A DNA stretch of 64,000 bases from Selaginella moellendorffii (taxonomy: Eukaryota > Plantae > Lycopodiophyta): assembly GCF_000143415.4 (NCBI RefSeq), contig NW_003314274.1, forward strand, positions 1 through 64,000, read 5' to 3'. The position numbers and the translations under genes were made by a program. Position 1 is the stretch's first letter, and each line of letters begins with the position of its first letter. Below the pieces are notes generated by a model that worked only from the letters and a program-made list of their open reading frames with translations, ran no database searches and was not told the DNA's origin. Positions 16,634-64,000 of this stretch are shown one piece after another.

Positions 16634-16729
16634 GTGTGCCAAGAATTGGTTATCAAATGTGCGTGTAAACTCTGCAAAAAGAAGAACCTCATCTTTCATG
16701 ATAGCGTTCACTCTTTGATGTTCTGATCC

Positions 16730-18871: not shown

Positions 18872-18875
18872 TCCA

Positions 18876-20949
18876 TCACCATCGTGTGACCGCTTGATGA
18901 AGTGAACTCTTCTTATCTGCTTTCAAGGCCGCCTCCTGTATAGTTTTGAGCTTATCATGATCCTCCCACAGCCCCGCGCTCCGGTAGATGCTCGCCATCA
19001 GAACGTACGCAGCCGAGTCATTCTCGTCGATCTTCGTCAGTGCCTCGAACGCAATCCTCCCCACTTCCACTTACGGCAGGCCCTCCTCCAAACCACAGCA
19101 TCCGCTCTCAAAGGCATGCTCTCGAGGACTTTCAAGGCCTCTTCCAGTCGGTTACGAGATCCACCAAGCTGCTGTAGTGATGAATCCCGCAAACAATGCC
19201 AGAGTCCGGGTCCATTGCCTGGAAAAACTCCCTGCCTCGTTCAACTATGCCGCCGTGGCTGCAAGCAGTGATGACCGAGACAAATGTGATTGCGTTTGCT
19301 CGCACGCCATCTTCTCGCATCTCGCGAAAGGCTTCGAACACGCGCGACGTGTCACCCTGTTGGCCGAATCCCGTGATCAGTGCATTCCAGGCGACGATAT
19401 CTCGGACTGCCAGAGATCCAAACAAGTGCTCGGCCGCACTCATAACTCCGCACTTCCTGTAGAAGTTTACTCCCCACAACTTGATCGTCTTCCAGCCCAC
19501 GCCTGTAAAGCTCAGCCTGGATTCCTTCCAGCTAGGCCGTAAGTGCTACAAGAGTCCGAGAGTTTGGAGCACAGTCCACTCCAAGAGTTCCAGCCCGAGC
19601 TCACTCTCACCGTTGTCTATATATCCCTGTATCGAGCTCGTCCAAACGACAACGTCCCGGCTAGGCATGCGTTTGAAAACTGCTCGAGCTTTCACCATAT
19701 CTCCACACTTGGCATACATGTCCACCAAGCTGCTCCCGACAAATCTGTGCTCGCAGCGTCCAAACTTCGCGGCGAGAGAATGAATCTCCATCCCCTTTTC
19801 TAGGCTCTGGATTCGCACTAGCTTTCCATCTTCTCGCGGAACAGGTGGCTCGGACGCTGAAAGGTGGACGCAGGCCATGAGCGCAGCAACAAACGTTCTC
19901 TCGTCCGGATCGTCCTCCCGAGCCATGCCGAAGAACAGCTCCAAGGCCAGCTTGCTGTCTCCACTTACATCGGCCAGCCATGCCATCGAAGACCTTGCGA
20001 GCTTCCTCTAGCTTCTCACACTTCGCGTACATATCGATCAGAGTGTTCCCCACGAACACGTCCCCACAGCACCTGTTGTTTGAAGCTTCACCGTGGATAG
20101 CCACCCCGGTTTCCAAGCTCTTTCTCTTCACGAGTTGCCGAGCTCGCACAGGCGGCAAGCGCAGTAACACACGTCCGAGAGCTTGGACAGCACCCAGATA
20201 GCTTCATATCTTCGAAGAACACGAGAGCCAGCTCGCTTTCCCCGTTGTCCACAAAGCCTTGTATCAAGCTCGTCCAGAGCACGACATCACGACGAGGCAT
20301 GCTCTCGAAAACCATCCGCGCGTCGACCATGCTCCCACACTTTGAGTACATGTCACTTGGCTGCTCCCCACGAAGATATCTCCACAGCAGTGGCTTTTCA
20401 CAGCTCCATCGTGAACAGCGAGCCCCTTTTCCAGGCTCTTCGTCTTCACCATCTTTTGGTGGCCTCCTCTTTCACTTCTAGATTCGCACAGGCCTTGGCA
20501 GCAGCAACGAAAGTCCAAGACTTTGGCGAGCAGTCCATTTTCCCAAAGAACTCGAGAGCGACCTCGCTTTCTCCATTCTCTACGTAGCCCAGTATCAACG
20601 CGTTCCAGGAGACCACGTCTCACTGTGACATCTCATCGAAGACCGATCGAGCATCGAGCATGATGCCGCACTTAGCTCGAGAGGAAAACGTCTTCGCTGC
20701 AAGACGGTCCCATCTGCTTGGCTTGAGAATGGATGCCTCTGCCGGTCTCGAGACTAGCCTCCTTGACGAGCTTCCCATCGACCAAAACAGCGTCTTCCTT
20801 CGCCGCGAGGCTGCTACAAGCCTTTGCCGCGTCCTGGAGTTTGGCTTGCAGCCCGACCGCCTGGCTTGCATCCTCTCGAAGAGATCCAGAGCCACATCGC
20901 TCTCGCCATTGGACACGTAGCCCAGCATCAAGGACATCACGTTTGGGTG
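18876..20949 (-). pseudogene. PLS-E class PPR pseudogene, copy 1
   Basis: Repeated LVDMYAKCG..ARAVF..MP.RDVV.W motifs across several frames, terminal E motif AAYVLMASIYRSAGLWE, and many frameshifts. Confidence 0.9.
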
Positions 20950-21290
20950 CCATCCTACTCGGGCCTGAAAGTAAACATGCAACGCCAGGAGGCCTAAGCT
21001 TGTCAAAACTGTGTTTACCAATGCGATGGTGCTCTGTGCCTGTAAAGCTTTTCCAAAAATTTCTCACACTCGGAAACCAAAAAAAAATCCAACTTTGAGC
21101 GTTCCAGTAGTTGTAGAGAGTGTCATACAAGCAGAAGTTTATCGCAAGCGTTGGGCCTATGGCAGGAGTCAAGTCTGTGGCATTTGGCAGGGAGGAAAAC
21201 CAATACCAAAAGCATTGGTCAGAGTTCCTTATAAAGGCTAAGAAAGCTCTCCTGTTGATGGATTGTGGAAAGCGTGTGATAGATGCAGAC
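20950..21290 (-). pseudogene. Mitochondrial carrier (SLC25) fragment, copy 1
   Basis: HTLSTIHQQESFLSLYKEL*PMLL and AIGPTLAINFCLYDTL resemble carrier motifs EG..GLYKG and GP..AI.F..Y.TL, with stops. Confidence 0.7.
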
Positions 21291-21299
21291 GCACGGCAA

Positions 21300-23200
21300 C
21301 ATCTACACGCAAGAGCACAAAAGCTGTCAAGGGAACAACCAACAACAAAGATCACAAAGCTCAAGGTGAGGAAATTTAGGAGAAGACTTAGGAACAAGAT
21401 CCTGAACATGTAACCACCTTGCAGGTTCCAAACTTACAGTCGTCAATCTAGAGTGTAATGTGAACATGACCCAGCAGGAGCAGTCTCCAGCATCTCCACT
21501 GCACACAGCAACACCAACACAACCAGCTCTCAATGCCGACACCAACAACATGCTACATCACCGCAAACACCACAGTTGAGAGCATCCCAAGCAGGAGTGA
21601 TGCTGCAAGCCTGAGCTCACACTGGATCTTAAGTTTGGCATTTCTCCAGTTTGTGGACAAAATGCAGTGTCTCCAGTCAACACCATAGATGCCGATACCA
21701 GCAGATTTTGCGAGGTTTTTTCACAACAAGCAGATGAGCATTTTCATGCGAGACAGAGTCCAATCAACACCTTTGTCTACCAGCCCCTAGATGTGAAGCT
21801 CACGAAGATCCAGAACCATATTCTCCAGCTCAAGAGGAGCATTTGAGGTACAACTTTCTAGGGATCTGTATGCACAAAAACTTAGCGCATGAACAAGGAA
21901 CTCCCCAAGGAGAATGCAGAGCTTCGCAATGAGATCCGACAGCTCAAGGTGAAGCAACTGTAGTGTGCTACAACAGAAGAACAAGTTCAAGAATGAGCTC
22001 TCTGGAGTCATAGCAACAATAAAACAGCTTAATGCCATGGAGAAGTGAGAGCTTCAAGATGAAACTCAACTCAGTTGCAGGAGAAAAGTGGAGCATAGAA
22101 AATCAACTTTATATTTAGAAACATCATCCTAAGGCTTGAAATTTAAACTTTGAGACTCAAGAATAGGAATGAATGGCAATTGCCCCATGTAGAACTAATT
22201 AAGGGGGTGAGTTAACACTCAAACTTTATCCCTTTCTTTTGTATTCTAGCCTTCCATCATTAATGCATGTTTATTTGCTCAAACCTAGAATACTCAAGCA
22301 ATGCCAAGTTTATCTTTGCTCATGACTTCAACAAAAGCCTTCATGGGGATTGAAGGACTCAAATCATTCCTTTTTTACTTTTTATATATTTATTTGTGTC
22401 TAGCTGAAGCAAATGCAAAATTAAATCAAACAAGTGTAGTAGTAAATATCCACTCTACTCTCACCTTCTTTTCTCTTTCACTCTTATTTTCTTTTCCTCT
22501 TTCTTTCTTTTGTAATATAAGCTTTTAGCATATAAATTTTTACCCAAGTTTCTAGGAATGACTTGTTTTGACCTTTAAAGAAATGATTGAGAAATACATG
22601 AACTTTTAGCATTTAGATTGGGATGGATATTTGTCATTTCTTTGGTATATATATATATCATAGGGTATAAAGTTCCATTGGTGCTTCACCTTATAAATTT
22701 CTATATGGTCATTATTTGATATTGCTAATGGAGTTGAGTTTTGCTATAAGTTGCTAATACTAAGTCTTGGGATCAATATTTGATAAGTGTTCTTCCACTC
22801 ATTCAAGTGGAATTTATTGAGCACTTAGGCTGTGTATAAGTGGGATAATAACAACACAACAAGTTCCATCATTGTTCACTAGTGGAGTATAAAGTGGATG
22901 ATTTAATGTTAATCCATTTTCCTAATGTTATAGTATATGGTTTCTCTAAGGGGCTCTTTATTCAGTGGAAGGGACCATATTAAGTATTGTGGTAAGTTAA
23001 ACTACACATTTATAAAGTTTGGCAAAACATTCAACAAACTAATCCTCCAGAAATTACACATATGCAATAACTTAAACACTTTGTATAAAGGGATCAGGCC
23101 CCACCTATAGATCCACCAATGCCTCCTCTTATCTTGTTAATCTGAAAACCTTAACTACTTTTCATCCTTTTAAAAGAATAGGATGATATGAGGTCTGTAT
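21300..23200 (+). mobile_element. Decayed Ty3/gypsy retrotransposon remnant, copy 1
   Basis: Integrase relics at ~22550-23110: LKEMIEKY...HLDWDGYLSFLWY, SSIGASPYKFLYG, and the GPY/F motif QWKGPY...LKHF. Assignment of 21300-22500 to the same element is tentative. Confidence 0.65.
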
Positions 23201-29230: not shown

Positions 29231-29317
29231 GTGTGCCAGGAATTGATTAGCAAATGTGCGTGTAAACTCTGCAAAAAAAACCTCATCTCGCACGTTCACT
29301 CTTTGATGTTCTGATCC

Positions 29318-31855
29318 ATGGCCATGTCTCTCGCGGATTTGCTGCTGCCTTTGTTTCTACTCGTCTTTCTCACAAGATCCCGGTCACAGTGCCCCACAAA
29401 TCCATCCGCAATCGTGAACGACACACAGGTTCTTCTCTCTCTCCGTGACAGGCTTGGCATCAAAGTGTGGATCGAGACTGCCAATCCAAGAGCATGGCGG
29501 GGAGTGGAGTGGAGCTCGGACAACCAAGTGGAGGGCCTCGCTCTGTCCAGGTTTAATCTCTCGGGAGTTTTTCCTGCCACCTGGGCCGAGCTTCCATCGC
29601 TGGCTCGCCTGGACCTCTCGCAAAACGGCCTCTCCTCGCTGGAAGTCCCTTGCAAAAATATGCAGCTCAACCTCCTCAACTTGAGCTCCAATTCCCTGCA
29701 AGAGTTCCCCGGAAATCTCTCCAGCCTCGAGAGTTTGGAAAGCCTGGACCTCAGTGGGAACTTCTTAACAGTGGCCGGACTCCCAAAGTTTAGCTTGACG
29801 CTGCGATCGCTCAACCTGTCCATCAACAACTTAACTGGGAGCTTTTCCATTGGTGGTAACCTGGGACTGGAGGCACTGGAACTCTCGCACAACGGCCTCA
29901 GCGGCTCCATTCCAGAAACTTTCGGGGAGATGACGAACTTGACGCGCCTGGACATATCGTATAACAGGTTTAGAGGAGATCTACCCGATATTTGGAGCAA
30001 GAACTTGGAGCTCAGGTACATGCGTATCTCCAAAAATTCGCTCCAGGGTGGTTTGCCACCGAGCTTGAGAAGGCTACGCAAGCTCTCGGTTTTACACGCT
30101 GCCTACAACTCTCTCTCCGGGCCACTGGAGCTGGAAGATGGCGACTTTGCAAGCATCGAGGTTTTGAACCTCGGGCTAAACGGGTTTAGCGGAACGATCC
30201 CGGCTACTCTGGGAGGCTTGAGGAACATCAGAGAGATATGGCTCGACAGCAATAACTTGACTGGAACAATCCCAGGCGAGCTCTCGAAGCTCTCGCATCT
30301 CCAGAAGCTGGTTCTCAGGGGGAATCGTTTTAGTGGCGCCATACCTCTGGAGCTTGGAAACTGCTCGAACATCAGAGAGATATGGCTCGGCAGCAATAAC
30401 TTGACTGGAACAATCCCAGGCGAGCTCTCGAAGCTCTCGCATCTCCAGCTGCTGGTTCTCACGGGGAATCGTTTTAGTGGCGCCATACCTCCAGAGCTTG
30501 GAAACTGGTCGAACATCAGAGAGATATGGCTCGACAGCAATAACTTGACTGGAACAATCCCAGGCGAGCTCTCGAAGCTCTCGCATCTCCAGAAGCTGGT
30601 TCTCACGGGGAATCGTTTTAGTGGCGCCATACCTCCGGAGCTTGGAAACTGGTCGAACATCAGAGAGATATGGCTCGACAGCAATAACTTGACTGGAACA
30701 ATCCCAGGCGAGCTCTCGAAGCTCTCGCATCTCCAGATGCTGGTTCTCACGGGGAATCGGTTTAGTGGCACCATACCTCCGGAGCTTGGAAACTGGTCGA
30801 ACATCAGAGAGATATGGCTCGGCAGCAATAACTTGACTGGAACAATCCCAGGCGAGCTCTCGAAGCTCTCGCATCTCCAGATGCTGGTTCTCAACAGGAA
30901 CGACATGGGCGGGGAGCTCCCTTCCGGACTCTCCAACTGCACCGAGCTCGTTAGTCTCTGGCTGGACCAGAACAAGTTCTCTGGAAATCTCCCTGACAGC
31001 TTCGGGAATTTGAGCCGCCTGCTCGCTCTGGGGCTTTCCAGCAACGATCTTGTCGGTTCAATCCCGGCCATGTTGCAAAACATGTCGTCTCTGCAGTTCC
31101 TCATCCTCGAAAACAACAGATTCAGTGGCTCCATACCGGACTGGCTTCCCAGGCTCACGAACTTACGAGCCATGGACTTCTCGGGTAACAGGTTCTCTGG
31201 GGAGATGCCGGAAAGCATTGGCCGACTGTTTGCCAACGTCCAGCTTTACAACCAGAACAAACGGTCTGTGATGATTCAAACCACGCGAGGACTCCTCTAC
31301 AACGGCTTCGCCTACCCGACCTCCATAGACTTCTCCTTCAACCAGCTGACTGGAAGCATTCCAGCTGCCATTGGCGACCTCTACAAGCTCCAGGTGCTGG
31401 ACCTGAGCCACAACCAGCTAACAGGTCCCATTCCCGAGTCCCTGGGGAAGGCAAGGAATCTCTCCGAGGTGGCGCTTGCGAGCAATCGTCTCAATGGCTC
31501 CATACCATCGTCCGTGGCGGACCTCTCGTTTCTCACCATCTTCGACGTCTCCAACAACAGCCTGGTGGGACGGATACCTGACAGCCCGCAACTCTCGTCC
31601 ATGGACGCGGCTCTCTTCGCTGGGAATCAGCTCTGTGGCTTGCCACTGACCAACACCTGTTCGAGCACTGCTATGCTGCCACATAAGCCTAGAACAGAGG
31701 GACAAGGTGGTAGCGAACAGGACCAAAGAGAAGTGACAATTGTCAGCGTTGCCATCTTCGTGGCAGCCTTCTTCAACGCGTTCTTCTGGACCTACTTTGC
31801 GGCAAACCACAGAGCTCATTCCCAGCTCTGTGGATGCTGGCAATCAAATCTCTAG
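29318..31855 (+). CDS. LRR receptor-like protein, copy 2 (845 aa)
   Basis: Near-identical to 16730-18871, with six extra LRRs and a different cytoplasmic tail. Open frame intact. Confidence 0.93.
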   Translation: MAMSLADLLLPLFLLVFLTRSRSQCPTNPSAIVNDTQVLLSLRDRLGIKVWIETANPRAWRGVEWSSDNQVEGLALSRFNLSGVFPATWAELPSLARLDLSQNGLSSLEVPCKNMQLNLLNLSSNSLQEFPGNLSSLESLESLDLSGNFLTVAGLPKFSLTLRSLNLSINNLTGSFSIGGNLGLEALELSHNGLSGSIPETFGEMTNLTRLDISYNRFRGDLPDIWSKNLELRYMRISKNSLQGGLPPSLRRLRKLSVLHAAYNSLSGPLELEDGDFASIEVLNLGLNGFSGTIPATLGGLRNIREIWLDSNNLTGTIPGELSKLSHLQKLVLRGNRFSGAIPLELGNCSNIREIWLGSNNLTGTIPGELSKLSHLQLLVLTGNRFSGAIPPELGNWSNIREIWLDSNNLTGTIPGELSKLSHLQKLVLTGNRFSGAIPPELGNWSNIREIWLDSNNLTGTIPGELSKLSHLQMLVLTGNRFSGTIPPELGNWSNIREIWLGSNNLTGTIPGELSKLSHLQMLVLNRNDMGGELPSGLSNCTELVSLWLDQNKFSGNLPDSFGNLSRLLALGLSSNDLVGSIPAMLQNMSSLQFLILENNRFSGSIPDWLPRLTNLRAMDFSGNRFSGEMPESIGRLFANVQLYNQNKRSVMIQTTRGLLYNGFAYPTSIDFSFNQLTGSIPAAIGDLYKLQVLDLSHNQLTGPIPESLGKARNLSEVALASNRLNGSIPSSVADLSFLTIFDVSNNSLVGRIPDSPQLSSMDAALFAGNQLCGLPLTNTCSSTAMLPHKPRTEGQGGSEQDQREVTIVSVAIFVAAFFNAFFWTYFAANHRAHSQLCGCWQSNL
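30224..30893 (+). repeat. 144-bp (two-LRR) tandem repeat, ~4.6 copies, inside RLP copy 2
   Basis: NIREIWL(D/G)SNNLTGTIPGELSKLSHLQxLVL(T/R)GNRFSG(A/T)IPxELGNxS repeated with very few nucleotide differences. Confidence 0.97.
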
Positions 31856-33320
31856 CTCGTCCACCATGTTGCTGCCGTCCTTTCTACCTTTCAGTTTGTA
31901 ATCGACCGCTTGATGAAGTGAACTCTTCTTATCCGCTTTCAAGGCCGCCTCCTGTATAGTCTTGAGCTTATCATGATCCTCCCACAGCCCCGCGCTCCGG
32001 TAGATGCTCGCCATCAGAACGTACGCAGCCGAGTCATTCTCGTCGATCTTCGTCAGTGCCTCGAACGCAATCCTCCCCACTTCCACTTACGGCAGGCCCC
32101 GAGGACGCTCCTCCAAACCGCAGCATCCGCTCTCAAAGGCATGCTCTCGAGGACTTTCAAGGCCTCTTCCACTCGGTTACGAGATCCACCAAGCTGCTGT
32201 AGTGATGAATCCCGCAAACAATGCCAGAGTCCGGGTCCATTGCCTGGAAAAACTCCCTGCCTCGTTCAACTAGGCCGCCGTGGCTGCAAGCAGTGATGAC
32301 CGAGACAAACGTGATTGCGTTTGCTCGCACGCCATCTTCTCGCCTCTCGCGAAAGGCTTGGAACACGCGCGACGTGTCACCTTGTTGGCCGAATCCCGTG
32401 ATCAGTGCATTCCAGGCGACGATATCTCGGACTGCCAGAGATCCAAACAAGTGCTCGGCCGCACTCATAACTCCGCATTTCCTGTAGAAGTTTACTCCCC
32501 ACAACTTGATCGTCCTCCAGCCCACGCTCACTCTCACCGTTGTCTATATATCTCTGTATCAAGTTCGTCCAAACGACAACGTCCCGTCTAGGCATGCGTT
32601 TGAAAACTGCTCGAGCTTTCACCATATCTCCACACTTGGCATACATGTCCACCAAGCTGCTCCCGACAAATCTGTGCTCGCAGCGTCCAAACTTTGCGGC
32701 GAGAGAATGAATCTCCATCCCCTTTTCTAGGCTCTGGATTCGCCCTATCTTTCCATCTTCTCGCGGAACAGGTGGCTCGGACGCTGAAAGGTGGACGCAG
32801 GCCATGAGCGCAGCAACAAACGTTCTCTCGTCCGGATCGTTCTCCCGAGACATACCGAAGAACAGCTCCAAGGCCAGCTTGCTGTCTCCACTTACATCGG
32901 CCAGCCATGCCATCGAAGACCTTGCGAGCTTCCTCGTACCTTCTCACACTTCGCGTACATATCGATCAGAGTGTTCCCCACGAACACGTCCTCTCGAAGA
33001 GATCCAGAGCCACATCGCTCTCGCCATTGGAGACGTAGCCCAGCATCAAGGACATCACGTTTGGGTGAAGAATGCTGTCGAACACGCGGCGGGAATCCTC
33101 CATGCTGCCGCATTTCTCGTCCACCAGCGCATTGACAACATGGATCCCCAGCTGCTTGCTCTCCGCCGCCTGGGCGTGGATCGCGCAGGCGCAAATTGCC
33201 CTTGCGCAAATCCCTTGTGACCTTCAACGCCGACACCTGCTGATCGGGCGCCCGCGGCGGCGCTGCCGAAGGAGCGAATGCTGGTGCGGCGCATCGAATC
33301 GCTGCCGTCGCCAAGTCTCA
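31844..33320 (-). pseudogene. PLS-E class PPR pseudogene, copy 2
   Basis: Homologous to 18876-20949. Retains the 5' end (MATAAIRC..., NALVDEKCGSMEDSRRVFD) but has internal deletions and frameshifts. Confidence 0.9.
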
Positions 33321-33399
33321 TCCATCGCAAGAACCCTAAACATTTGCTGGAAATTCAACCAAGGCCGTCGATTCAAGAATATCTGACGGTTGGAAATGA

Positions 33400-34000
33400 A
33401 TCGGGGACCGGAAAAACCTTGAGGTACTCAGGAAAAATCGCCCTGTACAACCCAGCGTAGCCTTGGGTGCGAACAATGTGCCTCGGCGCGCTCGCAATCC
33501 CAGGCTTGTAAGCCGGTGTCCATCTCCGGTCGCCCTCGAGTTAAGTCGATTGGAAACACCGCTGAAAACAGGAACTATGGCGATCAAGCGTAATCGCTCT
33601 TAAGACTCTTACCTGTTGAGGCAGCGATTCCTGCTACTCCACCGGAGATCAAGCTCGTCACCATCCTACTTGGGCCTGAAAGTAAACATGCAACGCCAGG
33701 AGGCCTAAGCTTGTCAAAACTGTGTTTACCAATGCGATGGTGCTCTGTGCCTGTAAAGCTTTTCCAAAAATTTCTCACACTCTGAAACAAAAAAAAATCC
33801 AACTTTGAGCGTTCCAGTAGTTGTAGAGAGTGTCATACAAGCAGAAGTTTATCGCAAGCGTTGGGCCTATGGCAGGAGTCAAGTCTGTGGCATTTGGCAG
33901 GGAGGAAAACCAATACCAAAAGCATCGGTCAGAGTTCCTTATAAAGGCTAAGAAAGCTCTCCTGTTGATGGATTGTGGAAAGCGTGTGATAGATGCAGAC
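33400..34000 (-). pseudogene. Mitochondrial carrier (SLC25) pseudogene, copy 2, longer
   Basis: Adds VTSLISGGVAGIAAST, VFPIDL and HIVRTQGYAGLYRAIFPEYLKVFP (third carrier repeat) with intron relics. Confidence 0.8.
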
Positions 34001-34009
34001 GCACGGCAA

Positions 34010-35920
34010 CATCTACACGCAAGAGCACAAAAGCTGTCAAGGGAACAACCAACAACAAAGATCACAAAGCTCAAGGTGAGGAAATTTAGGAGAAGACTTA
34101 GGAACAAGATCCTGAACATGTAACCACCTTGCAGGTTCCAAACTTACAGTCGTCAATCTAGAGTGTAATGTGAACATGACCCAGCAGGAGCAGTCTCCAG
34201 CATCTCCACCGCACACAGCAACACCAACACAACCAGCTCTCAACACCGACACCGACAACATGCTGCATCACTGCGAACACCACAGTTGAGAGCATCCTGA
34301 GCAGGAGTGATGCTCGCAAGCCTGAGCTTACACTGGATCTTAAGCTTGGCATTTCTCCAGTTTGTGGACAAAATGCAGTGTCTCCAGCCAACGCCACAGA
34401 TGCTGATACCAGCAAATTTTGCAAGGCTTTTCCACGACAAGCAGATGAGCATTTTCATGCGAGACAGAGTCTAATCAACACCATTGTCTACCAGCCCCTA
34501 GATGTGAAGCTCACAAAGATCCAGAACCATATTCTCCAGCTCAAAAGGAGCATTCGAGGTACAACTTTCTAGGGATTTGTATGGCAAAGATTTAGTGCAT
34601 GAACAAGGAACTCCCCAAGGAGAATGCAGAGCTTTGCAATGAGATCCAACAACTCAAGGTGAAGCAGTTGTATAGATAGGTGCACTACAACAGAAGAACA
34701 AGTTCAAGAATGAGCTCTCTAGAGTCATAGCAGCAACAAAACAGCCCAATGCCATGGAGAAGTGAGAGCTTCATGATGAAACTCAACTCAGTCATGGGAG
34801 AAAAGTGGAGTATAAAAAATCAACCTTATATATAGAAACATCATCCTGAGTCTTGAGATTCAAACCTTGAGACTCGAGAACAGGAATAAATGGCAATTGC
34901 CCCATGTAGAACTAATTAAAGGGGTGAGTTAACACTCAAACTCTATTCCTTTCTTTTGTATTTTAGCCTTCTGTTATCAATGCACATCCATATGCTTAAA
35001 ATCTAAAGTACTTATGTGATGTTAAGTTTATCTTTGCTCACAACCTTGACAAAAACTTTCATAAAGATTGAAGGACTTAAGTTATTCCCTTTTTACTTTT
35101 TATGTGTTTATTTATGTCTAACTGAAGTAAAATGCAAAATCAAGTCAAAAAAGTGTAAGCAAACATCCACTCCCCTTCTTTTCTCTTTCACTTTTATTTT
35201 CTTTTCCTCTTTTTTTCTTTTCTAGTCATATAGACTTTTATCCAAGTTTCTGGGAATGACTTGTTTTAACCTTCAAATGGATAATTGCAAAACACATTAA
35301 CTTTCAACATTTAGATTGGGATAGATATTTGCTATCTCTTTGGTATATGTATATCACAGAGATAAAAAGTTTTATTGGTGCTTCACTATATAAATTCCTA
35401 TATGATTATTATTTAATATTGTCAACAAAGTTGAGTTTACCTTTGTGATTGCTATAAGCTGTCAATACTAGGTCTTAGGATTAGTATTTGATGAACATTC
35501 TTCCACTTGTTTGAGTGGAGTTTATTGAGCACTTAGGCTATGTACAAGTGGGATAATAACAACACAATAACTTCCATCATTATTTATTAGTGGAATATAA
35601 AGTGGATGACTTAATGTTAATCAATTTTCCCAAATGTTACAATATATGGTTTGTCTAAAGGACTCTTTATTCAATGGAAGGGGTTATATTAAGTGTTGTG
35701 ATAAGTTATATTGCATGTTTAAGGTTTGGCAAAACATTCAATAAACCAATTCTCCAGAAATTATACATGTGCAGTAACTTAAATGCTTTATATAAAGGGA
35801 TTAGGCACCACCTACAGATCCACTAATGCCTCCTTTTGATATTCCTTTAGATCTTAGCCTGTCAACCTTAAAACCTTAACTACCTTTCATCTTTCTAAAA
35901 GAATAGGATGATATGAGGTC
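34010..35920 (+). mobile_element. Decayed Ty3/gypsy remnant, copy 2
   Basis: Colinear with 21300-23200. Integrase relic at ~35240-35830. Confidence 0.6.
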
Positions 35921-37701: not shown

Positions 37702-39134
37702 ATGGCGAGGTCCGTGCTCGTGATCAACTCTGGCAGCTCATCGATCAAGTGAGTAAAGATTTTTGTGAAGAAAGAGTTCCTCTAGAGGGTCAATGTATCG
37801 CAGGTATGCCCTGTATCATCTGGGAAGAGTGGCTTCTTGCATTTTCCAGGGCAGTGTGGAAGGCATTGGAACTTCCAAGAGCTCCATCTCCCACAAGAGC
37901 ATCTCCACTGCCCAAGATCTAAAAATCATGGTATTTGTGTTCCAGCAATCTTAAAGCCTTTGTACATGGATAGCTGGGTTGCTAATAGTTTTTTGGTTTT
38001 CTTCCAGGGAAAATGTATTGGAGACCACGAAGCTGGTCTCAAGAAAGTGATGGATTTGCTCCAGCAGCCGCAAAACGTTTGCGCTGTCGGGCACCGAGTC
38101 GTTCACGGCGGCGAGCAATTTAGCAAACCAACGCATATAACTCAAGAGGTGAAGAAAGCAATCGAGAGGGCTGTTCCTCTAGCTCCACTTCACAATCCAG
38201 CAAACTTGGAGGTAACAAATCTTAACTTTCTTTATTCCAAAAGGAAAAATCCATTTTTTTGTCCCATTTTTTCTCCATTAAAAAGATCACAAAAAATTTC
38301 CAGGGAATTCGAGTTGCTGAGGAGCTCTTCCACTGCCCCCACGTAGCCGTCTTTGACACAGCCTTCCACTCCACCATCCCCCGGCCGTCGTACACGTACG
38401 GAATCCCCTGGAAGCTGTACGAAGAGCTGGGCGTACGGCGCTATGGCTTCCACGGGACGAGCTACCAGTTTCTTCTTGGCGAGGCCTCCCGCGCCCTTGG
38501 AAGGCCAGCGCTGGAACTTAATCTCATCGCCTTCCATCTCGGCGCTGGAGCGAGCATGTGTGCGATCAAGCACGGGCAATCGATCGACACAAGCATGGGA
38601 ATGACTCCACTCGAAGGTTTAGTGATGGCTACTCGGAGTGGCGACGTTGATCCGGCGATCTGGCCCTTCCTCGCAGCGCACAGATCCATGGGCTTGGCCG
38701 AGATCGATGCTTTGCTCAACAAGGAGAGTGGGATCTACGGGCTTTGCGGAGACAAAGATATGAAAGAAGTTGTGCAAGCCGCGGATAGTTCCGACAAGCA
38801 CAGGCTAGCGCTGGAGGTGTACGTCCACCGTATAAGGAAGTATCTGGGAGCGTACATGGTTGATCTCGAGGGGAAAGTTGACGCGCTGGTGTTTAGCGGT
38901 GGCGTTGGCGAGAGGTCGGCTAAAATCCGGTCCATGGTTTGCGAGAGGCTGGAGGCTTTTGGAATCCAGGTTGACGAGGAGAAAAATGGTAAAAGCTTGA
39001 GAGAGATCCACAAGGATGGTTCGAGGATCAAGGTTTTGGTGATACCGACCGACGAGCAGCTTTGTATTGCGCAGCAAACTCGCGAGGTTTTGGAGAGTTT
39101 GGAAGCTCCGGTTTGTGAGAAGAGTGGGGGATAG
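37702..39134 (+). CDS. ACK: Acetate kinase, 4 exons
   Basis: Exons 37702-37748, 37804-37930, 38008-38211 and 38304-39134 join in frame through GT-AG introns. Motifs [66 protein letters not shown] and IPTDE. Confidence 0.95.
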
Positions 39135-44950: not shown

Positions 44951-45156
44951 TATATATATACATATATGTATATATGTATATGTATGTATATATGTATATA
45001 TGTATATATATGTATGTATGTATGTATGTATATATGTATATATGTATATATGTATGTATGTATGTATGTATATATGTATGTATGTATGTATGTATATGTA
45101 TATATATATGTATGTATGTATATATATGTATATATGTATGTATGTATATATGTATA
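44951..45156. repeat. Compound (TA)n/(TATG)n microsatellite
   Basis: ~205 bp made almost entirely of TA, TATG and TATATG units. Confidence 0.97.
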
Positions 45157-47335: not shown

Positions 47336-48517
47336 TTATGCCAGAGGATCCAGCAAACCACGACGTTGTAGTTTTGTACAAGTGGGACAGTACCACTTGG
47401 CCTTAAATCTCGTCTCGGAGCTCAAGCCAACGCACTGATAATGGAACCATTCCCCTCCTGTGCACTGAAAGAAAACCAGCAATTCTAAGTTATGATCGCG
47501 GGATCATGTCATCCGTAAGTTATGTCACGTTACGATCACAAGATCGAGGGATGGAAAACTTACGTTCTCGTTATCGCAAGCGATCATGTCCCCAAACGAA
47601 ACCTGCGAGGAAGAACACCAAACATATGGACAGGAAAAAACATGAAAACAATACCTGACCACAGATACAATACGTTTCTTCGTTGGGATCCACGGGTTGA
47701 TCCAAGTCGGGAGCTGGAAGGCTTCTCTTCCTGTAGTTGCCAGGAGGTGGCATGAGCTCGGTGTCCCGATCGCGTTCCCAGTCCTTGAGTTCTAGTCTCT
47801 TTCCTGGCGGGACAAAGAAGCTAGACTTCCTTTTCTCGTCGCGCAATGGCAGCATTGGAAGGATCGCAGGCTCGTCTGGTGATATCTTCCCCTCTATAAG
47901 AAAAGCAAAGCTTAAGAACAGAAAGAACAACGAAAAGGAGAAAAAATTTCTCATACCAAGCTTGAGATCCTCCGCGAACTGGTTTAAATCCTCGTCTAGT
48001 CTCTTCATCTGGCTATCGATCTGACCAAATCATGCTCGTAAGAGAGAACAAAACAGGGAATCTTAGCAGTAGAAGTTTGAAGCTACTTACTTACCAAGTC
48101 GTAAGCTTGCTGTGCTAGCAAAACTTTCTCCGTGCAAAGGCTCCGGATATTGTCGTGGTTTGCTTCGATCTCCTTCTTTAGCCTCTCGAATTCTTCCTGC
48201 TCTGGCGATGGCTTCTTGATCTGCTGCGTGGGAAGGAACAGGCAAGTCTTCGTGTCCTCGCGTGTTTGTAGCATCATATCTGTGAATCACGCATCATAAG
48301 CCGAGAACAAGAGCGATCAAGCACTTAACTGTGTGCTCGCACATCGAGCTCCGTCATTGTGGAGAGATGGCGCTGGACTTCGGCGTGGAGAGAGCTCGAA
48401 TCTGTGGATCCATCCAATGCCAATGCCGGCGATGAGCTCCGCTGCTATAGGCGATAGAGATTCCAACTTACATTCTAGATAATCGTCCACAAAGACGCCG
48501 GTTCTAGCGATCGCCAT
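47336..48517 (-). CDS. ING2: PHD finger protein ING2, multi-exon
   Basis: [15 protein letters not shown] start, [25 protein letters not shown] and [11 protein letters not shown]...KWYCPTC. Stop at 47336-47338. Confidence 0.93.
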
Positions 48518-54729: not shown

Positions 54730-56969
54730 ATGGACGTGGCGAGCAGCAATGCCGCGCTCATGCGGCGGATCGTGCAGCTAGAGAGTGGTAATCTCTTGTA
54801 ATTTCACACCTTTCTTCTGATGGATTGAGCGTAGAGCGCGATGAGCTGCGGCGGGATGTGGAGGCCCTGTGCATGCAGCAATCTGGAGAGCGCTCCGGCG
54901 GTGATTTTATGTCTCGGTTGCAAGCTCGCAGGTCAGATTTCCTCTTCTTGTTGTCTCTCTCATTCAATTGATCCCTGAGATTTTTCCTGGCCAGGCTTGC
55001 TGGATTGGAGCAGGAATTGGAAGCTTACAAGAACAAAGTGTCGGCGTACAAGCGAGAGAATGAGAATTTGCAAGAAGAGCTCTCCGAGCTGTACAAGATC
55101 AAGGTTTATCGATTTTTTTTGTCTGGATTTTGTGTACGGCTTTTTTAGACTTTCGTTCTTTTGATTCTTCCGTAGAGTCAAGTGTCGGAGCTTTACAAGA
55201 ACGAAAGCGAAAAGGTAAATGTTTTGGAATTTTGTTGGTAAATGACATCAATGTTCGTTGGCAGCACAAGAAGCTGGAGCAAGAAATAAAGTTTTTCCAA
55301 AACAACATGGCCTCCTCAATTAGTGAAAGGGACAAGCTTCTTCTTGAGGTATGTGCTGAATTTTTATGGTTATGCATTAGGAAACTATTGACGCAGATAG
55401 AAAGAATTCAAAATCACGGACAATCACTTGAAGAAGATCTTAAGGCTTTTCGCCGCAGGCAAGTCTCCTGGTTCTTTTCGTCTTCTTCATGCACCGTTGT
55501 TTTCCAGGCAGAAGGAAATGTTGCAGGAAAACGAATTAAAAAGCGCCCGTTTGGAAGAAATGGAGGAAAATATGGAGAAACTGAATGCTCAACTGCACGT
55601 CTATCACCAGGTTCAGCATGGTGAAAGTGTTGTCTTTGTGACGTAAAGAAGTACTTGACTGCTGAGTTAACTAACAGGTTGTCCACAAATTCTGGCGCCT
55701 TCGATCTTCAAGTGAGATGGCGGAAGACACAGACGCGCTTGAGCAGGCGAAATCTCTCGTATCGGATGTAGACGGATCGTGGAGTTTTGGTGAAGTCGCT
55801 GAACTGGAAAAGCAACTACGGCACAAAGTTGAAAGCCTTGAAACCACCAATGTAAGCTTTTACCTTGTCTACTTAACGTCTCAGACTAACGTTTTAACTG
55901 TCAGGTCTCGTTGGAAAAAGATTTAGCCTCTGTAAAAGCTGAAGCTGACCACTTACGAGATGCTAAAGCAAAGGCGGAGTCCTCCGTTGTCGATCTTGAG
56001 ATGCGCCTGGTAAAAATGGATGTCGTGATTACCTCAGGGATTTAACTTTGATTTTCCAGTTGAAATTTGGAGTATACCTTGGTAGCGCTATGCAAGAGCT
56101 TTACATGTGTCACAGAAGGTTGAAGAATGATGTTTCTACTATGTTTAAGGCCGAAAAGACCTTCCTCGAGGCTACTTTGACTTCTTTTCAAGAGATTGCA
56201 GATAAAATCAAGACAGCTGAGACCAGTTGTTCTACAACAGGAAGCCGAATCACGTCGGATACGAGCGACACGGGAACAAGCAGTGAGGTGAAACGAGTTT
56301 CTGTTTTTATTTTTCTTTTCAACAGAGAGATTCATTGCAGGTTCAAGAAAACAAAAGTGCGCAACCGGTTGTTAGCCAGGACGCTTTTTTGCAAGCATTA
56401 CAGGACAAGGTATATAGTTCATCGTTTTTTTGTACTGCCACATAAACGCCTGATAAAATCGTGAACTTTGCTTTAGGTGTCAGCCTTAATGTTGCTCTCG
56501 CAGGAAGAAGAGAGGCGTCACCTGGAATGCAAGACAACGGGAGCCTTGGAATATCAGATAGAACAGCTCAACGAGACATTATCCCAGGTTCGAGCTCTAG
56601 ACTCAATTCTCCAGCCTATGATTAACTTGTTTAAACATGTAGGTGACACTGGAAAAAGTGGACGCTTTGATGCAAGTCGCGCGGCTTAAGTACGAGTGCG
56701 ACGAGTTGAAAGATCGCGAAAGGTTTATCCCTTTTTTTTTCACTCCATTAAAAAAACTGCTCTTTTTCTCTTGCAGGGATTTATTGAAACGTCTTGAGAA
56801 GCCGTCTAGCTCAAACACCGGTGGGAGATTACTACCAGCTAGCTGGGCTGCAACCACAGAGCCTATAGACGTCGTCGAGGAGGAGATTACACAAGAAAAA
56901 AAGCAGCCATCGACGACATCGACGAGTTATCTCAAGTCCTGGTTGAGGGGTGGCGGCGGCGGAGAGTAG
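54730..56969 (+). CDS. Conserved plant coiled-coil (myosin-heavy-chain-related) protein, multi-exon
   Basis: Spliced RIVQLESERDELRRDVEALCMQQSG...AGLEQE, LEQEIKFFQNNMASSISERDK and SALMLLSQEEERRHLE. The 3' end is uncertain. Confidence 0.75.
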
Positions 56970-57108
56970 AACCACACTTTGTCAAATTTTCTTGTACGCA
57001 TGGAGTTCTCCAGGTAGAGTTTCTTTTTTAAGATCGTATTGTTCTTCACAGGTAGCTAAGAATGTATGTTTCTTTCCAGCGTTTGTGGGAAAAAGTTAAG
57101 AATTTCGT

Positions 57109-60034: not shown

Positions 60035-61014
60035 CTAGAACTGTGCAGCGGTCGTGAAGGTTTGTCCGAATTTCCAATTTTGCGGCACTGCGTCGAGAGC
60101 TATCCTACTCTCGCCATCGCTGGTACTCACAACGAAAGACAGGCCTTGCTCTAGCATCGACCGGTTGGAAATATGCCAGTTCTGGCCCCAAGCGCGAGTC
60201 GCCGGCGTCCACGGAGATCGTGATCCTTTGACAACCACGCTCCGGACATCTCCAGCTCCACCTACGTTGGAGATCATCACCAAGATGAACCATTTGTTCC
60301 CACGCATCGTGAAACGAATGCCACCCTGCCTCTTGCACTCGACTCTACACAAGATCATCGTAAGTCAGTGTGATTTCATGACTTATGGTGTGCTACCTTG
60401 TGTAGATGACTGGGATGATTCCTGCGGTCCTGTTCGCGAGGTGAACGAAGGCCGGCATGGAAAGATCGAAGTGTTGCTGTGGATAGTTGCACCATCCTCC
60501 TCGGTAGCTCTTGCGAGCGGGATTTGGAGGGCAGAAGTTCGTGGCGGTGACGGTGATGGAGAGATTGCCGGGACGGCACCACTTTGGATCCTGATGGCAC
60601 TTGAGCTCGTAGCAAGCTCCACAGGAAGCTCCGTTCTGGAACAAGACGGTGCTCAGAGCGGTGGTCTCCACTCCAAAGCCTTCGTGGTACATGTTGCCAT
60701 AGCCGCAAGCTCCTCCTGCGAGAGAAGATCGAGCCAAGAAGACACACGCATCACGGTCAGTTCTTCTCTTCGCTCTCCTTTGTTTTCGTTCTTTCTTTCC
60801 CAGAGATCTTGTGGAGGAAGTCTTTACGAATCGATGGCTCTTGGCAGGAAAGACGAAGCGAAAGTTTACCCATTGTTCCCGACGCGTCCGAGCCGCCATA
60901 GTACGTTGCGTGAGCTAAAGTCCAGCCCTCTGGAATAGCTTGCTTCTCGCGTTCTTGCGCTACTGCGAGAGAGAGGAAGAAGAGAGGAAGAAGAACACAA
61001 GAAGCCATCTCCAT
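60035..61014 (-). CDS. Alpha-expansin, 3 exons
   Basis: Signal peptide, [50 protein letters not shown] and WKFGQTF. Confidence 0.97.
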
Positions 61015-61256
61015 CTCTAAAAACTCTTGCAAGAAACTCAAATAGAAAGATTAACGGGTAAGAAATCTATAACGGTTTTCATATACTTTAAAATATTATG
61101 GTTTAGTACTAAACCTAAATTGTCAAATCAAGAATTAGCATGCTTATATTTAGTGGAAATTAATTTTGATTGTTGCTTTTATTTTTTAGTAAACTTAAAT
61201 TTAAGCAGGAATTCTCACTATATAAACATGGTTAGTTGGATGATAATTATAAAAAA

Positions 61257-61548
61257 ATGGGTTTAGAGAAAAAGTTTTTTGTGTTTCTGCTAGTGACAAT
61301 TTTGATTGTTAATACGCATTGTGCTAGTCCTGCTCCCTCAAATCCAGATGCTCCTCACGTGGTTAAATTGACAGATGAAGATTCACGTAAATATAATGCC
61401 AAAAGATTTAATTTTTTTCTTAACTTTTTAAATTTTCTTTTTCTCAGACAATGTGAAATGTTGGAGGAGGTGTATTGAGAAACCAAAGCACTGGTGCTGG
61501 TATTGGGGATGTTGTTATATTCCACCTGCATCTCCCTCACCCTCTTAA
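61257..61548 (+). CDS. Small secreted Cys/Trp-rich peptide precursor (76 aa), 2 exons
   Basis: TATA-like ctatataaac at 61218. Exon 61257-61386, GT-AG intron 61387-61447, exon 61448-61548 give MGLEKKFFVFLLVTILIVNTHCASPAPSNPDAPHVVKLTDEDSHNVKCWRRCIEKPKHWCWYWGCCYIPPASPSPS. Confidence 0.72.
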
Positions 61549-61787
61549 AAAGAAGATTTACCATATTCTAATCTAATTTTTCACACCAACACCTCAAATT
61601 TACTGTATTGTGAATTCTTACCATTCATTTCTACCATCCTGATATTCACCTCTTTGTTAAACATTTGACGTTGTTCAATTAAAAAACACTCACACTTGGA
61701 ATCTTCCCTCTGTCGCGAAAATTTTAAAAATCTCTTTTTGGAGCATTTTGGGCATACTTCCTAGACTTTAGGGCTCATCCATCCGCA

Positions 61788-64000
61788 ATGAATCGGTCCT
61801 TTGCGGGAATGGGCGAGGAGTGGAGGATGAATTTGGGGTTGTCGAGGCTCATTGGCGAGGCCATGGCGGTTCCAGCGTGGGAGTATGCCATTCTCTCCAC
61901 TCTCATTGCGATTGTGCTCCTCTACCATGTCCTGGATTTCCATTTCGTCGGCGACCTCCTCACGGGGCTCAGGGGCGATAAGGTGGAGCTCGTTTATAGC
62001 CCTTTCTCTCGAATTGCGGGGCAAATTCTCGCCAAATCCCAGTTCTTCAATCGCAGGTTTGTGAGTGATTTCTTTCGTGTCGATTTGGATGTGAAAACTT
62101 TTGTGGTTTCTTCGATTTGTTAGATATTGGCCAACGCCATGGCTTTGTAGTCCACACCTCCAAACAGCGTTTGTGCATTTCCATGGACGGCCACCAAAGG
62201 TGACTTACAGGAGGTGAGACGTCATTCTCGCATCTCTTTCGCGTTTTTTCACAAGGATGTATCAGAGAGCTTTTCGTCGCGCCAGATGGAGGCACGACTG
62301 CTCTCGACTGGCTCGATCCAGGTTTGTCAAAAACTAAAAAACAAATCTATAAGAGCTTGACTAATATCGTGTCCTTTGCTAGAGTCATCTGGGAGTATCT
62401 CTATACAAGAGACTCCTATAGTGATCATCGTGCCGGGACTAAGCAGTGAATCGAGCAACGCTGTAAGCGTGAAATGTTTCCACAGTTGAAGAACTGGACT
62501 TTCTCTTCATGCAGTATATGAAGCATTTGGCCCATGGAATGGTAAATCAAGGCTGGAGAGCCGTCGTCATAAACCACAGAGGCCTCGGAGGCGTGACTCT
62601 CACCGTAAGCTTTGCGTGAACAGCTTTCTCTTCCTTCCATTTCATTTCTTACTGTATTGTTTAGTCGGAGCGATTCTATCACGCAGGATGGACGAGCGAT
62701 TTGAGATGGTTTATCCAGGATTTACACAAGCAATTTCCTAAGGCACTTCTTCTAGCAGTTGGCACCAGCCTCGGTGCTAATATCCTGGTACCTTAAGATC
62801 TGTGTTTTCTAGTTCTTTTAACGTTGTCATTGGGATTTTAGGTGAAGTATCTAGGTGAAGAAGGCGAGAACACTTTACTTGGTGGTGCAGTCTCTATCTG
62901 TAATCCCTGGGATCTTGTGGTGCGTCTGTGTGGAAAAGCTTTATTTCTCATTCTTTCTTCTTTTTTCTTTTTACTTTGCAGGTTTGCGACAGATTTATAG
63001 CTCGGAAACCTGTCCAAAAGCTCTATGATAAAGCAGTAGCAACGGGACTTACTGACTTTGTGCACAGGTAAGTCGTTGTTTTCGATGCTGTGAATTTTGG
63101 CTACAACTTGGTTTTCCTTTGTGTGAGCAGGCATTCGACCGTGCTGTCAAGTATGGACAACTGGAACTTTATCAGGAAGGTAAACACTTGACGGCTTTCT
63201 GATTTTTCATGTTTCTTTTTTTTTTCTCTCCTGCAGTCACGCTCTATACGAACTTTCGATCATCTTTTCACGATAACAGTCGGCAAGTTTGAGGTGAAAC
63301 ACATCTTACTTCTCTCGAACGATTTTCATGAAACTGCATGAAATTCTCTCGTTTGCAGACAGTGGATGATTACTATCGACGGTCCAGCAGTGCTCACCTC
63401 GTTGGCTCGGTCGCCGTGCCCCTCCTTGCTGTTAACTCTCGCGACGATCCCTTGTGCACAAAAGAAGCTATTCCATGGGACGAATGCAGGTAAATCGTCG
63501 TCCATATTTTCCACTAAACGTTGAATTTGATGGCAACTCCTTTCCAGGCTCAATCCTAATGTCCTACTTGCAGTGACACGGCACGGTGGCCACCTTGCGT
63601 ACTTTGAAGGCTTGACTGCCAAAAGCATTTGGTAAAATCCGTTTTTTTCGTAGACTTGTTTCTTGATTTATTCTTCTCTATGCATTCCAGGTGGGTTCGT
63701 GCTATTGAGGAGTTTTTCCAAGTTATAGTTTCGAGTTCTCCGGTGCCAGTTTCAGAGGTTTGAAAAACGAGAAAAGTTTCATTATAACTTAACGCAAGTT
63801 TTTTGTTTGAGCGCTGTAGGATCCTAGTCCCCAGCCAGTCTCAGAACCTTTGCCAGTAGTAGCAGCAGCGGAAGAGCCCTCCACCTCTTGTACAACTGTG
63901 GAGCCGGACGTTGCTGAAACGATGGTGCTGAACGAGGAAGAGATCTTTTCCGAGGAATCTAGTCGGGAACTGGAGTTCCAGCCTCGAACGGCTGCTGCAG
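61788..64000 (+). CDS. Alpha/beta hydrolase, EMB8/ABHD1-3-like, multi-exon, truncated by the window end
   Basis: Spliced PTPWLCSPHLQT, GTTALDW, IVPGLSSES, FYHAGWTSD, nucleophile GTSLGAN, RDDPL and HGGHLAYFEG. The exact start ATG is uncertain. Confidence 0.9.

What the first reader, a model, noticed from the sequence alone, without database searches (positions are those of the whole stretch)
61218..61548. Hidden two-exon gene for a secreted Cys/Trp-rich cationic peptide
Seen: TATA-like box, signal peptide, Pro-rich and acidic pro-like segment, a 61-nt phase-1 intron, then KCWRRCIEKPKHWCWYWGCCY (5 Cys, 4 Trp, spacing C-x3-C-x7-C-x4-CC) and a Pro/Ser tail. The ORF track misses the mature domain. 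The spacing fits neither defensin, thionin nor hevein patterns as I know them, and only loosely recalls alpha-hairpinins. Inference: a new antimicrobial or signalling peptide family. The gene is AT-rich and divergent from expansin across 242 bp.
Basis: partly seen in the sequence, partly recalled or inferred. Interest (0 to 1): 0.75.

Follow-up and report, generated by a model that had tools for sequence, protein, structure and literature searches.

The report
Unproven orphan Cys/Trp peptide ORF
The two-exon reading frame for a small secreted cysteine- and tryptophan-rich peptide is in the DNA as described, but it sits in an ordinary AT-rich promoter spacer between two plant genes, has no relative anywhere, and could not be shown to be a gene, so it is more likely a chance frame than a new peptide family.

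Summary

The "new family" claim has no support. There is no paralogue in the window, no Pfam, PDB or fold match, and no true hit among 1.84 billion protein representatives. No database protein of 40-128 aa shares exon 1.

The frame lies in a 773-bp, 32% GC spacer between an alpha-expansin gene (minus strand) and a plus-strand gene. I estimate about 0.05 composites of this kind per window by chance.

- **For a real gene:** an intron-like GC dip (38.5/18/44.6%), one workable in-frame donor/acceptor pair, and a strong signal-peptide-like start.
- **Against:** GC3 of 33% where neighbours show 50-68%, 38 nt from TATA to ATG, five cysteines, and a 276-nt ATG-free leader-like stretch of the next gene that begins inside exon 2.

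Odds: chance frame about 0.5, real orphan secreted-peptide gene about 0.27, non-coding spliced exons about 0.1.

The joined protein was never searched; the exons were searched apart. The scan holds one other note on this same stretch and none on other DNA.

The parts
60035..61014 (-). Alpha-expansin gene (three exons, ATG at 61014 or 61008), the upstream divergent neighbour
   Evidence: Pfam DPBB_1 E=1.7e-22 and Expansin_C E=2.1e-24; sequence read
61219..61226 (.). TATA-like box, palindromic, matching on both strands. It lies 38 nt before the peptide ATG and about 205 nt before the expansin ATG.
   Evidence: plus-strand matches at 61219, 61221 and 61248; minus-strand match at 61224
61257..61386 (+). 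Putative exon 1: ATG, signal-peptide-like 22 codons (61257-61322), then a Pro/Ser/Ala-rich and acidic segment; 38.5% GC
   Evidence: It is the only strict signal-peptide-like ATG ORF in 19 kb of low-GC DNA, but 0.5-1.6 are expected by chance.
61387..61447 (+). Putative 61-nt phase-1 intron: GTAAAT donor, pyrimidine tract plus CAG acceptor, 18% GC, 51% T
   Evidence: The GC contrast with its flanks is in the top 0.03% of placements in low-GC DNA. It is one of 5 loci in the window with a contrast of at least 0.25.
61448..61548 (+). Putative exon 2 with stop codon: Cys/Trp-rich cationic core (61459-61518) and Pro/Ser tail; 44.6% GC; no tandem repeat
61512..61787 (+). 276-nt ATG-free, G-poor, C/T-rich stretch running to the next gene's ATG. 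It is probably that gene's leader and core promoter, and it overlaps the last 37 nt of exon 2.
   Evidence: longer than any of 765 ATG-to-ATG gaps in other low-GC DNA (maximum 241); P(0 ATG)=0.023 given its own composition
61788..62056 (+). First coding exon of the downstream gene, probably of the alpha/beta-hydrolase fold, followed by a 67-nt intron (62057-62123)
   Evidence: Only a weak Hydrolase_4 hint (E=0.11) on a later exon piece; the family name is my reading.

Best explanation
The stretch is most likely ordinary intergenic DNA: the 773-bp AT-rich spacer that carries the promoters and leaders of two divergent genes. These are an alpha-expansin on the minus strand and a probable alpha/beta-hydrolase on the plus strand.

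On this reading, three unrelated things in the spacer can be joined by one GT..AG pair into a 76-codon frame that looks like a secreted cysteine-rich peptide:
- a T-rich ATG-initiated frame, which reads as a signal peptide because T-rich codons encode Phe, Leu, Ile and Val;
- a non-repetitive GT-rich tract, which reads as Cys/Trp;
- the start of the C/T-rich leader of the downstream gene, which reads as Pro/Ser.

No peptide is made on this reading. Shown: the anatomy, the lack of relatives, and the chance rates. Inferred: that the spacer is not separately transcribed and spliced.
For: - **Composition.** 31% of the window is low-GC DNA of this kind, and the spacer is typical of it.
- **Long open frames are common there.** 122 stop-free frames of at least 40 codons in 18 kb. 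A 73-codon ATG ORF appears in 8.5% of shuffles.
- **Cys/Trp-rich readings arise at other loci.** Four other places in the window, two of them copies of one duplicated segment, all from GT- or TGC-rich tracts.
- **Composite chance rate.** About 2 strict signal-peptide-like frames per window, times 2.3% joinable to an exon with at least 5 Cys, gives about 0.05 per window. That is on the order of a hundred or more across the roughly 3,700 windows of this genome.
- **No relatives.**
- **Codon-position composition.** Not different from null frames: GC1-GC3 P=0.26, G1 P=0.10. GC3 is 0.33, against 0.50-0.68 in most coding frames of the window.
- **The neighbour's leader.** A 276-nt ATG-free C/T-rich stretch starts inside exon 2 and runs to the next gene's ATG. 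The peptide's tail and any 3' UTR would therefore lie on that gene's leader or promoter.
- **TATA box.** It is 38 nt from the ATG and is palindromic, so it may serve the expansin gene.
- **Protein language model.** Recognition score 1833, below the 2300 that 91% of known-family proteins reach (weak evidence).
Against: - **Exon/intron GC contrast.** The proposed exons have 38.5% and 44.6% GC and the proposed intron 18%. This contrast is reached by 0.03% of placements in other low-GC DNA and by 4 of 4,892 two-exon ORF models in the reversed window. It is one of only five such loci in the window; one of the others is a real acetate-kinase intron.
- **Splice sites.** Only one acceptor, and one donor with a good consensus (two poorer GT sites also keep the frame), put the two frames in register. 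The intron length matches real introns here, which are 51-155 nt.
- **Signal peptide and start context.** The signal-peptide-like start is of high quality and the ATG context is good.
- **Exon 2 is not a simple repeat**.
- **AT-rich genes exist here.** A real-looking gene with about 40% GC lies at 55-57 kb.
- **Earlier notes of this scan.** They report several real, unannotated small genes in this genome (I did not check them).
Confidence: 0.5

Rival explanations
1. It is a real, unannotated, lineage-specific two-exon gene.

- A signal peptide of about 22 residues sends a 54-residue product into the secretory pathway.
- A Pro/Ser/Ala-rich, acidic spacer acts as a pro-region or as a site for hydroxyproline glycosylation.
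- The cationic core (net about +4) folds as a short CxxxC helix packed on a Trp-rich hairpin, held by two disulfides, with one cysteine free or paired with another chain.
- The peptide binds microbial membranes or wall polymers outside the cell.

It would be transcribed from the TATA box at 61219 with a very short leader, and would end over the neighbour's promoter.
For: - Strict signal-peptide-like start with a good ATG context.
- One workable in-frame pairing: a single acceptor and a single good-consensus donor.
- Intron-like AT dip, and a length typical of local introns.
- A non-repetitive core that is dense in Cys.
- ASPAPS- and ASPSPS-type motifs in both exons.
- The AlphaFold single-sequence model of exon 2 has mean pLDDT 72.9, with a helix over residues 2-10 that covers the CxxxC motif.
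- The TATA position predicts a transcription start that skips the upstream ATGs at 61228 and 61240.
- Earlier notes report real unannotated small genes in this genome (unchecked).
Against: - No relative or paralogue of any kind.
- An odd number of cysteines.
- GC3 of 0.33, and no codon-position signal.
- A leader of only about 3-13 nt.
- Only 240 nt to the next gene's ATG, all of it ATG-free and leader-like.
- An expected chance rate high enough to give many such composites per genome.
Confidence: 0.27
2. The two GC-richer blocks are real exons but non-coding. They would be a spliced upstream transcript, or an alternative long leader of the downstream plus-strand gene that starts near the TATA box. 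The 76-codon frame would then be at most an upstream ORF that dampens translation of that gene.
For: - Same strand as the downstream gene.
- No other TATA-like box between 61549 and 61787.
- Exon/intron-like composition and good splice sites.
Against: - The putative leader would carry six spliced-in ATGs between 61257 and 61509, and then none for 276 nt. This pattern suggests the usual start of that gene lies after 61509.
- A 76-codon upstream ORF in a good context would almost abolish translation of the main frame.
Confidence: 0.1

Closest known systems
Alpha-hairpinin plant defence peptides (motif C-X3-C-X4-20-C-X3-C, helix-loop-helix; PMC4695807, PMC11591084)
   Same: Lys/Arg-rich and short. 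There is a first CxxxC that the model places in a helix, followed by a 7-residue loop before the next Cys.
   Different: The second half is C-x4-CC, not C-x3-C. There are five Cys. The model gives one helix plus short strands, not two antiparallel helices. There is no sequence match.
Ib-AMP peptides of Impatiens balsamina (20-residue basic peptides with a CC and a CXXXC motif and two disulfides; PMC4695807)
   Same: The core is about 20 residues, basic and Trp/Arg-containing, and holds both a CC and a CXXXC motif.
   Different: From my memory of Ib-AMP1, the motif order is reversed. There is a fifth Cys. This is a single-copy precursor rather than a multi-peptide one. There is no sequence similarity, and the plant lineage is unrelated.
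Selaginella secreted Trp/Cys hairpin-repeat peptides reported by earlier notes of this scan (14-residue unit C-x2-G-W-x-W-x4-C)
   Same: Same genome, unannotated, small, with a signal peptide, cationic, rich in Cys and Trp, and with a W-Y-W triplet.
   Different: No C-x10-C unit and no repeat. It is a singleton rather than a cluster, and shows no sign of transcription in the data I could reach.
Chance reading frames in AT-rich plant promoter spacers
   Same: Composition, position between two divergent genes, lack of any relative, and a chance rate of the same order as the observation.
   Different: The sharp AT dip bounded by good GT and AG sites is unusual for plain spacer DNA.

Membership tests
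Alpha-hairpinin | Cys motif C1-X3-C2-X4-20-C3-X3-C4 | tested here: not met
   Exon 2 has Cys at residues 4, 8, 16, 21 and 22. C-x3-C and the 7-residue loop fit, but the second pair is C-x4-C-C. Motif as given in PMC11591084 and PMC4695807.
Alpha-hairpinin | Helix-loop-helix fold with two disulfides | tested here: inconclusive
   The single-sequence AlphaFold model has one helix (residues 2-10) and two 2-residue strands, at pLDDT 72.9. No PDB match by Foldseek or VIA-align.
Ib-AMP | 20-residue basic peptide with four Cys in a CC plus CXXXC arrangement, released from a multi-copy precursor | tested here: not met
   Both motifs are present, but there are five Cys and a single-copy precursor. No sequence hit in the exhaustive search.
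Selaginella Trp/Cys hairpin-repeat peptides (earlier notes of this scan) | One to several 14-residue units C-x2-G-W-x-W-x4-C (C-x10-C) | tested here: not met
   No pair of Cys in exon 2 is ten residues apart, and there is no G-W-x-W unit. No alignment was possible.
Defensin, thionin, hevein, knottin, snakin, LTP, RALF, EPF and other curated families | Match to the family profile | tested here: not met
   Pfam scan of exon 1, exon 2 and the unspliced frame: nothing below E=0.03 and nothing relevant. PDB sequence search: 0 hits at E up to 10.
Plant secreted cysteine-rich peptide (generic class) | N-terminal signal peptide and a small mature part with at least 4 Cys | tested here: inconclusive
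   Heuristic signal-peptide criteria are met, and there are 5 Cys in 33 residues. SignalP was not available, and the Cys count is odd.
Expressed protein-coding gene | Spliced transcript across 61386/61448 | not testable with these tools
A metagenome scan for an exon-2 word found nothing, as expected. The unspliced frames of the real neighbouring genes are also absent from the protein collection, so absence there is uninformative.
Expressed protein-coding gene | Conservation of the frame in relatives or in the second haplotype | tested here: not met
   No relative in 1.84 billion representatives, nor by word search.

The most novel reading that the evidence does not exclude
A young, lineage-specific (possibly de novo born) Selaginella gene is nested in the shared promoter of an expansin gene and a hydrolase gene. 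It would encode a secreted, cationic Cys/Trp peptide with a cysteine pattern (C-x3-C-x7-C-x4-CC) found in no described plant peptide family. Its transcript would overlap the leader of the next gene.
Probability: 0.25. Interest if true: 0.5.

Novelty: not a real feature. Interest (0 to 1): 0.22.

Why it matters
**If the frame is real.** It would add one orphan member to the large and loosely defined class of plant secreted cysteine-rich peptides. It would also be a tidy example of a tiny gene squeezed into a bidirectional promoter in a very compact plant genome. That would interest people who study peptide discovery and gene birth, but it would not change any major view.

**If it is chance, as I think somewhat more likely.** The useful lesson is methodological. 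In this genome's AT-rich spacers, T-rich frames mimic signal peptides, GT-rich tracts mimic Cys/Trp-rich peptides, and C/T-rich leaders mimic Pro/Ser tails. About 2% of any ORFs can be spliced in silico onto a Cys-dense exon. Such calls therefore need transcript or conservation evidence before they are counted.

Tried and rejected
**Searches that found nothing**
- tblastn of each exon against the window: no paralogue.
- Pfam on both exons and on the unspliced frame: nothing.
- Word search with the 73-residue unspliced frame: no candidate at all.
- Exhaustive phmmer of exon 2: three hits, all repeat artefacts or WD40 repeats.
- PDB sequence search, Foldseek and VIA-align on the exon-2 model: nothing.
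- ESM Atlas: weak gallidermin look-alikes at 0.83, below the level that means anything.
- Rfam, repeats and tandem repeats on the spacer: nothing, so it is not an RNA gene, a transposon copy or a microsatellite.
- Metagenome scan for a 27-nt exon-2 word: nothing.
- This scan's notes searched by sequence: blank.
- The supplement of the 1KP cysteine-rich peptide paper looked too small to hold peptide sequences, so I did not open it.

**Checks that turned out uninformative**
- Exact look-up of the unspliced frames, including those of the real neighbouring genes: all absent, so absence tells nothing.
- An unsupervised search for real introns, meant to build a splice-site model, gave 9,518 candidates and was dropped.

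**Not available, or left out on purpose**
- The spliced (joined) protein was never built or submitted to any search or fold. Relatives longer than 128 residues that share only exon 1 were therefore not searched.

Full report
**What is there**

The window is plant nuclear DNA. Earlier notes of this scan assign the genome to the spikemoss Selaginella moellendorffii. I did not verify that name. Short introns (51-155 nt), dense genes and land-plant gene families fit it.

The finding lies in a 773-bp spacer of 32% GC. On one side is the ATG of an alpha-expansin gene on the minus strand (61014; Pfam DPBB_1 and Expansin_C). On the other is the ATG of a plus-strand gene at 61788. That gene is probably of the alpha/beta-hydrolase fold, but this rests on a weak Pfam hint and my own reading.

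- a TATA-like box at 61219-61226;
- an ATG at 61257, with A at -3 and G at +4;
- a 43-codon first exon, with a basic n-region, a 12-residue hydrophobic core, a small-residue cleavage-type site, and then a Pro/Ser/Ala-rich and acidic segment;
- a donor CAC|GTAAAT at 61387 and an acceptor with a long pyrimidine tract and CAG at 61447, giving a 61-nt phase-1 intron;
- a second exon that reads exactly as quoted, with Cys spacing C-x3-C-x7-C-x4-CC, four Trp, a Pro/Ser tail and a stop at 61546-61548.

The distance to the expansin ATG is 242 bp, as stated.

**Is it more than chance?**

About 31% of the window is low-GC DNA like this spacer, and most of the listed features are common in such DNA.
- A 73-codon ATG frame appears in 8.5% of dinucleotide shuffles of the spacer.
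- The other 18 kb of low-GC DNA holds 122 stop-free frames of at least 40 codons.
- Four other loci in the window translate to at least 9 Cys+Trp in 20 residues. Two of them are copies of one duplicated segment, and all come from GT-rich or TGC-type tracts.
- A strict signal-peptide-like start on an ATG frame occurs 5 times in the window, and at least 3 of those look like real genes. It occurs twice in the reversed window, and 0.5-1.6 times per 19 kb of shuffled low-GC DNA.
- Of all ATG frames of 25-120 codons, 2.3-2.5% can be joined by some GT..AG pair of 45-150 nt to a terminal exon with at least 5 Cys within 25 residues. The rate is the same in real and in reversed sequence.

Together these give about 0.05 such composites per 64-kb window by chance. 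That is on the order of a hundred or more across the roughly 3,700 windows of this genome.

Codon-position composition does not separate the frame from null frames (GC1-GC3 P=0.26, G at position 1 P=0.10). Its GC3 is 0.33, against 0.50-0.68 for most coding frames in the window. One real-looking coiled-coil gene at 55-57 kb is similarly AT-rich.

**What speaks for a gene**

The proposed exons have 38.5% and 44.6% GC, while the proposed intron has 18% and the upstream DNA 24%.
- That contrast is reached by 0.03% of placements in other low-GC DNA.
- It is reached by 4 of 4,892 two-exon ORF models in the reversed window, and by none of the 149 models with at least 4 Cys.
- Only five loci in the window show a GT..AG-bounded dip of this depth. 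One of the others is a genuine intron of an acetate-kinase gene.

Part of the contrast follows automatically from choosing a Cys/Trp/Pro-rich exon 2, so I count it as moderate evidence, not strong.

Only one acceptor can open the Cys/Trp frame, and only one donor with a good consensus fits it. Two poorer GT sites further upstream also keep the frame. The intron's length and T content are typical of local introns. Exon 2 is not a tandem repeat. A single-sequence AlphaFold model of exon 2 reaches mean pLDDT 72.9, with a helix over the CxxxC motif and a short hairpin; this says little about whether the gene is real.

**What speaks against**

No relatives turned up anywhere.
- There is no paralogue in the window and no Pfam match.
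- No candidate of 40-128 residues shares exon-1 words among 5.8 billion clusters.
- An exhaustive search of 1.84 billion representatives with exon 2 gave only three hits. Two are translated tandem repeats and one is a WD40 protein.
- PDB by sequence and by fold gave nothing. The language-model recognition score is low.

The product has an odd number of cysteines. A cleavage two residues earlier would keep Cys22 and give six; that is untested.

The TATA box is only 38 nt from the ATG, which implies a leader of a few nucleotides. The box is also palindromic and could serve the expansin gene.

Most telling is the stretch 61512-61787. It begins inside exon 2 and runs to the next gene's ATG. It contains no ATG at all, has 10% G, and is C/T-rich. 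At 276 nt it is longer than any of 765 ATG-to-ATG gaps in the other low-GC DNA, where the maximum is 241. That is what a plant 5' leader and core promoter look like. The peptide's Pro/Ser tail, and all of its would-be 3' UTR, would therefore lie on the neighbour's leader or promoter.

**What could not be tested**

A look-up showed that even the unspliced frames of the real neighbouring genes are absent from the protein collection, so the absence of this frame there means nothing.

The joined protein was never built, searched or folded. Relatives longer than 128 residues that share only exon 1 were not covered.

**Verdict**

I put about 0.5 on a chance frame in an ordinary divergent promoter spacer. 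I put about 0.27 on a real orphan gene for a secreted Cys/Trp-rich peptide. I put about 0.1 on real but non-coding spliced exons; the switch from many ATGs to none after 61509 argues against that last reading. The rest is unassigned.

If the gene is real, the most likely mechanism has four steps:
1. Co-translational secretion.
2. Removal of a signal peptide of about 22 residues.
3. Possible hydroxyproline glycosylation of the SP/AP motifs.
4. A cationic helix-plus-hairpin core, stapled by two disulfides, that binds microbial membranes or wall polymers.

All four steps are inference.

**Comparison with known families**

The core fails the defining motif of alpha-hairpinins, because its second half is C-x4-CC rather than C-x3-C (PMC11591084, PMC4695807). 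It shares only the presence of CC and CXXXC motifs with the Ib-AMP peptides. It also lacks the C-x10-C hairpin unit of the Selaginella Trp/Cys repeat peptides described in earlier notes of this scan.

The scan holds one other note on this same stretch with the same reading (s1-375081), and none on other DNA.

Noticed in passing
window 16700-21700 and 29300-34400: A direct duplication about 12.6-13 kb apart. It carries near-identical long ORFs with the same signal-peptide-type start (714 and 846 stop-free codons, LRR-kinase-like by eye), and further shared ORFs on the minus strand.
   Followed up: no
window 61512-61787: A 276-nt ATG-free, G-poor (10% G), C/T-rich stretch directly before the ATG of the downstream gene. 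It is longer than any ATG-to-ATG gap in 18 kb of other low-GC DNA and is probably that gene's 5' leader.
   Followed up: partly
window 47574-47954, minus strand: A 127-codon ORF with a strict signal-peptide-like start, 47% GC and GC3 of 0.54, with no Pfam match. It may be an unannotated secreted or membrane protein exon.
   Followed up: partly
window about 55000-57000, plus strand: A multi-exon gene that looks like a coiled-coil protein, with only about 40% GC and GC3 of 0.31-0.44. It shows that real genes in this genome can be AT-rich.
   Followed up: no
window 39510 (+), 21546 and 34256 (-), 5624 (-): GT-rich or TGC-type tracts that translate into stop-free stretches with 9-10 Cys+Trp in 20 residues. 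They are a recurrent source of false cysteine-rich peptide calls.
   Followed up: partly
window 45010-45130, plus strand: A microsatellite-like tract that reads as a Met/Tyr/Val/Cys/Ile repeat in one frame.
   Followed up: no
window 38212-38303, plus strand: A 92-nt intron of an acetate-kinase-like gene, with 26% GC against 46-60% in its flanks. I used it here as a yardstick for real intron composition.
   Followed up: partly
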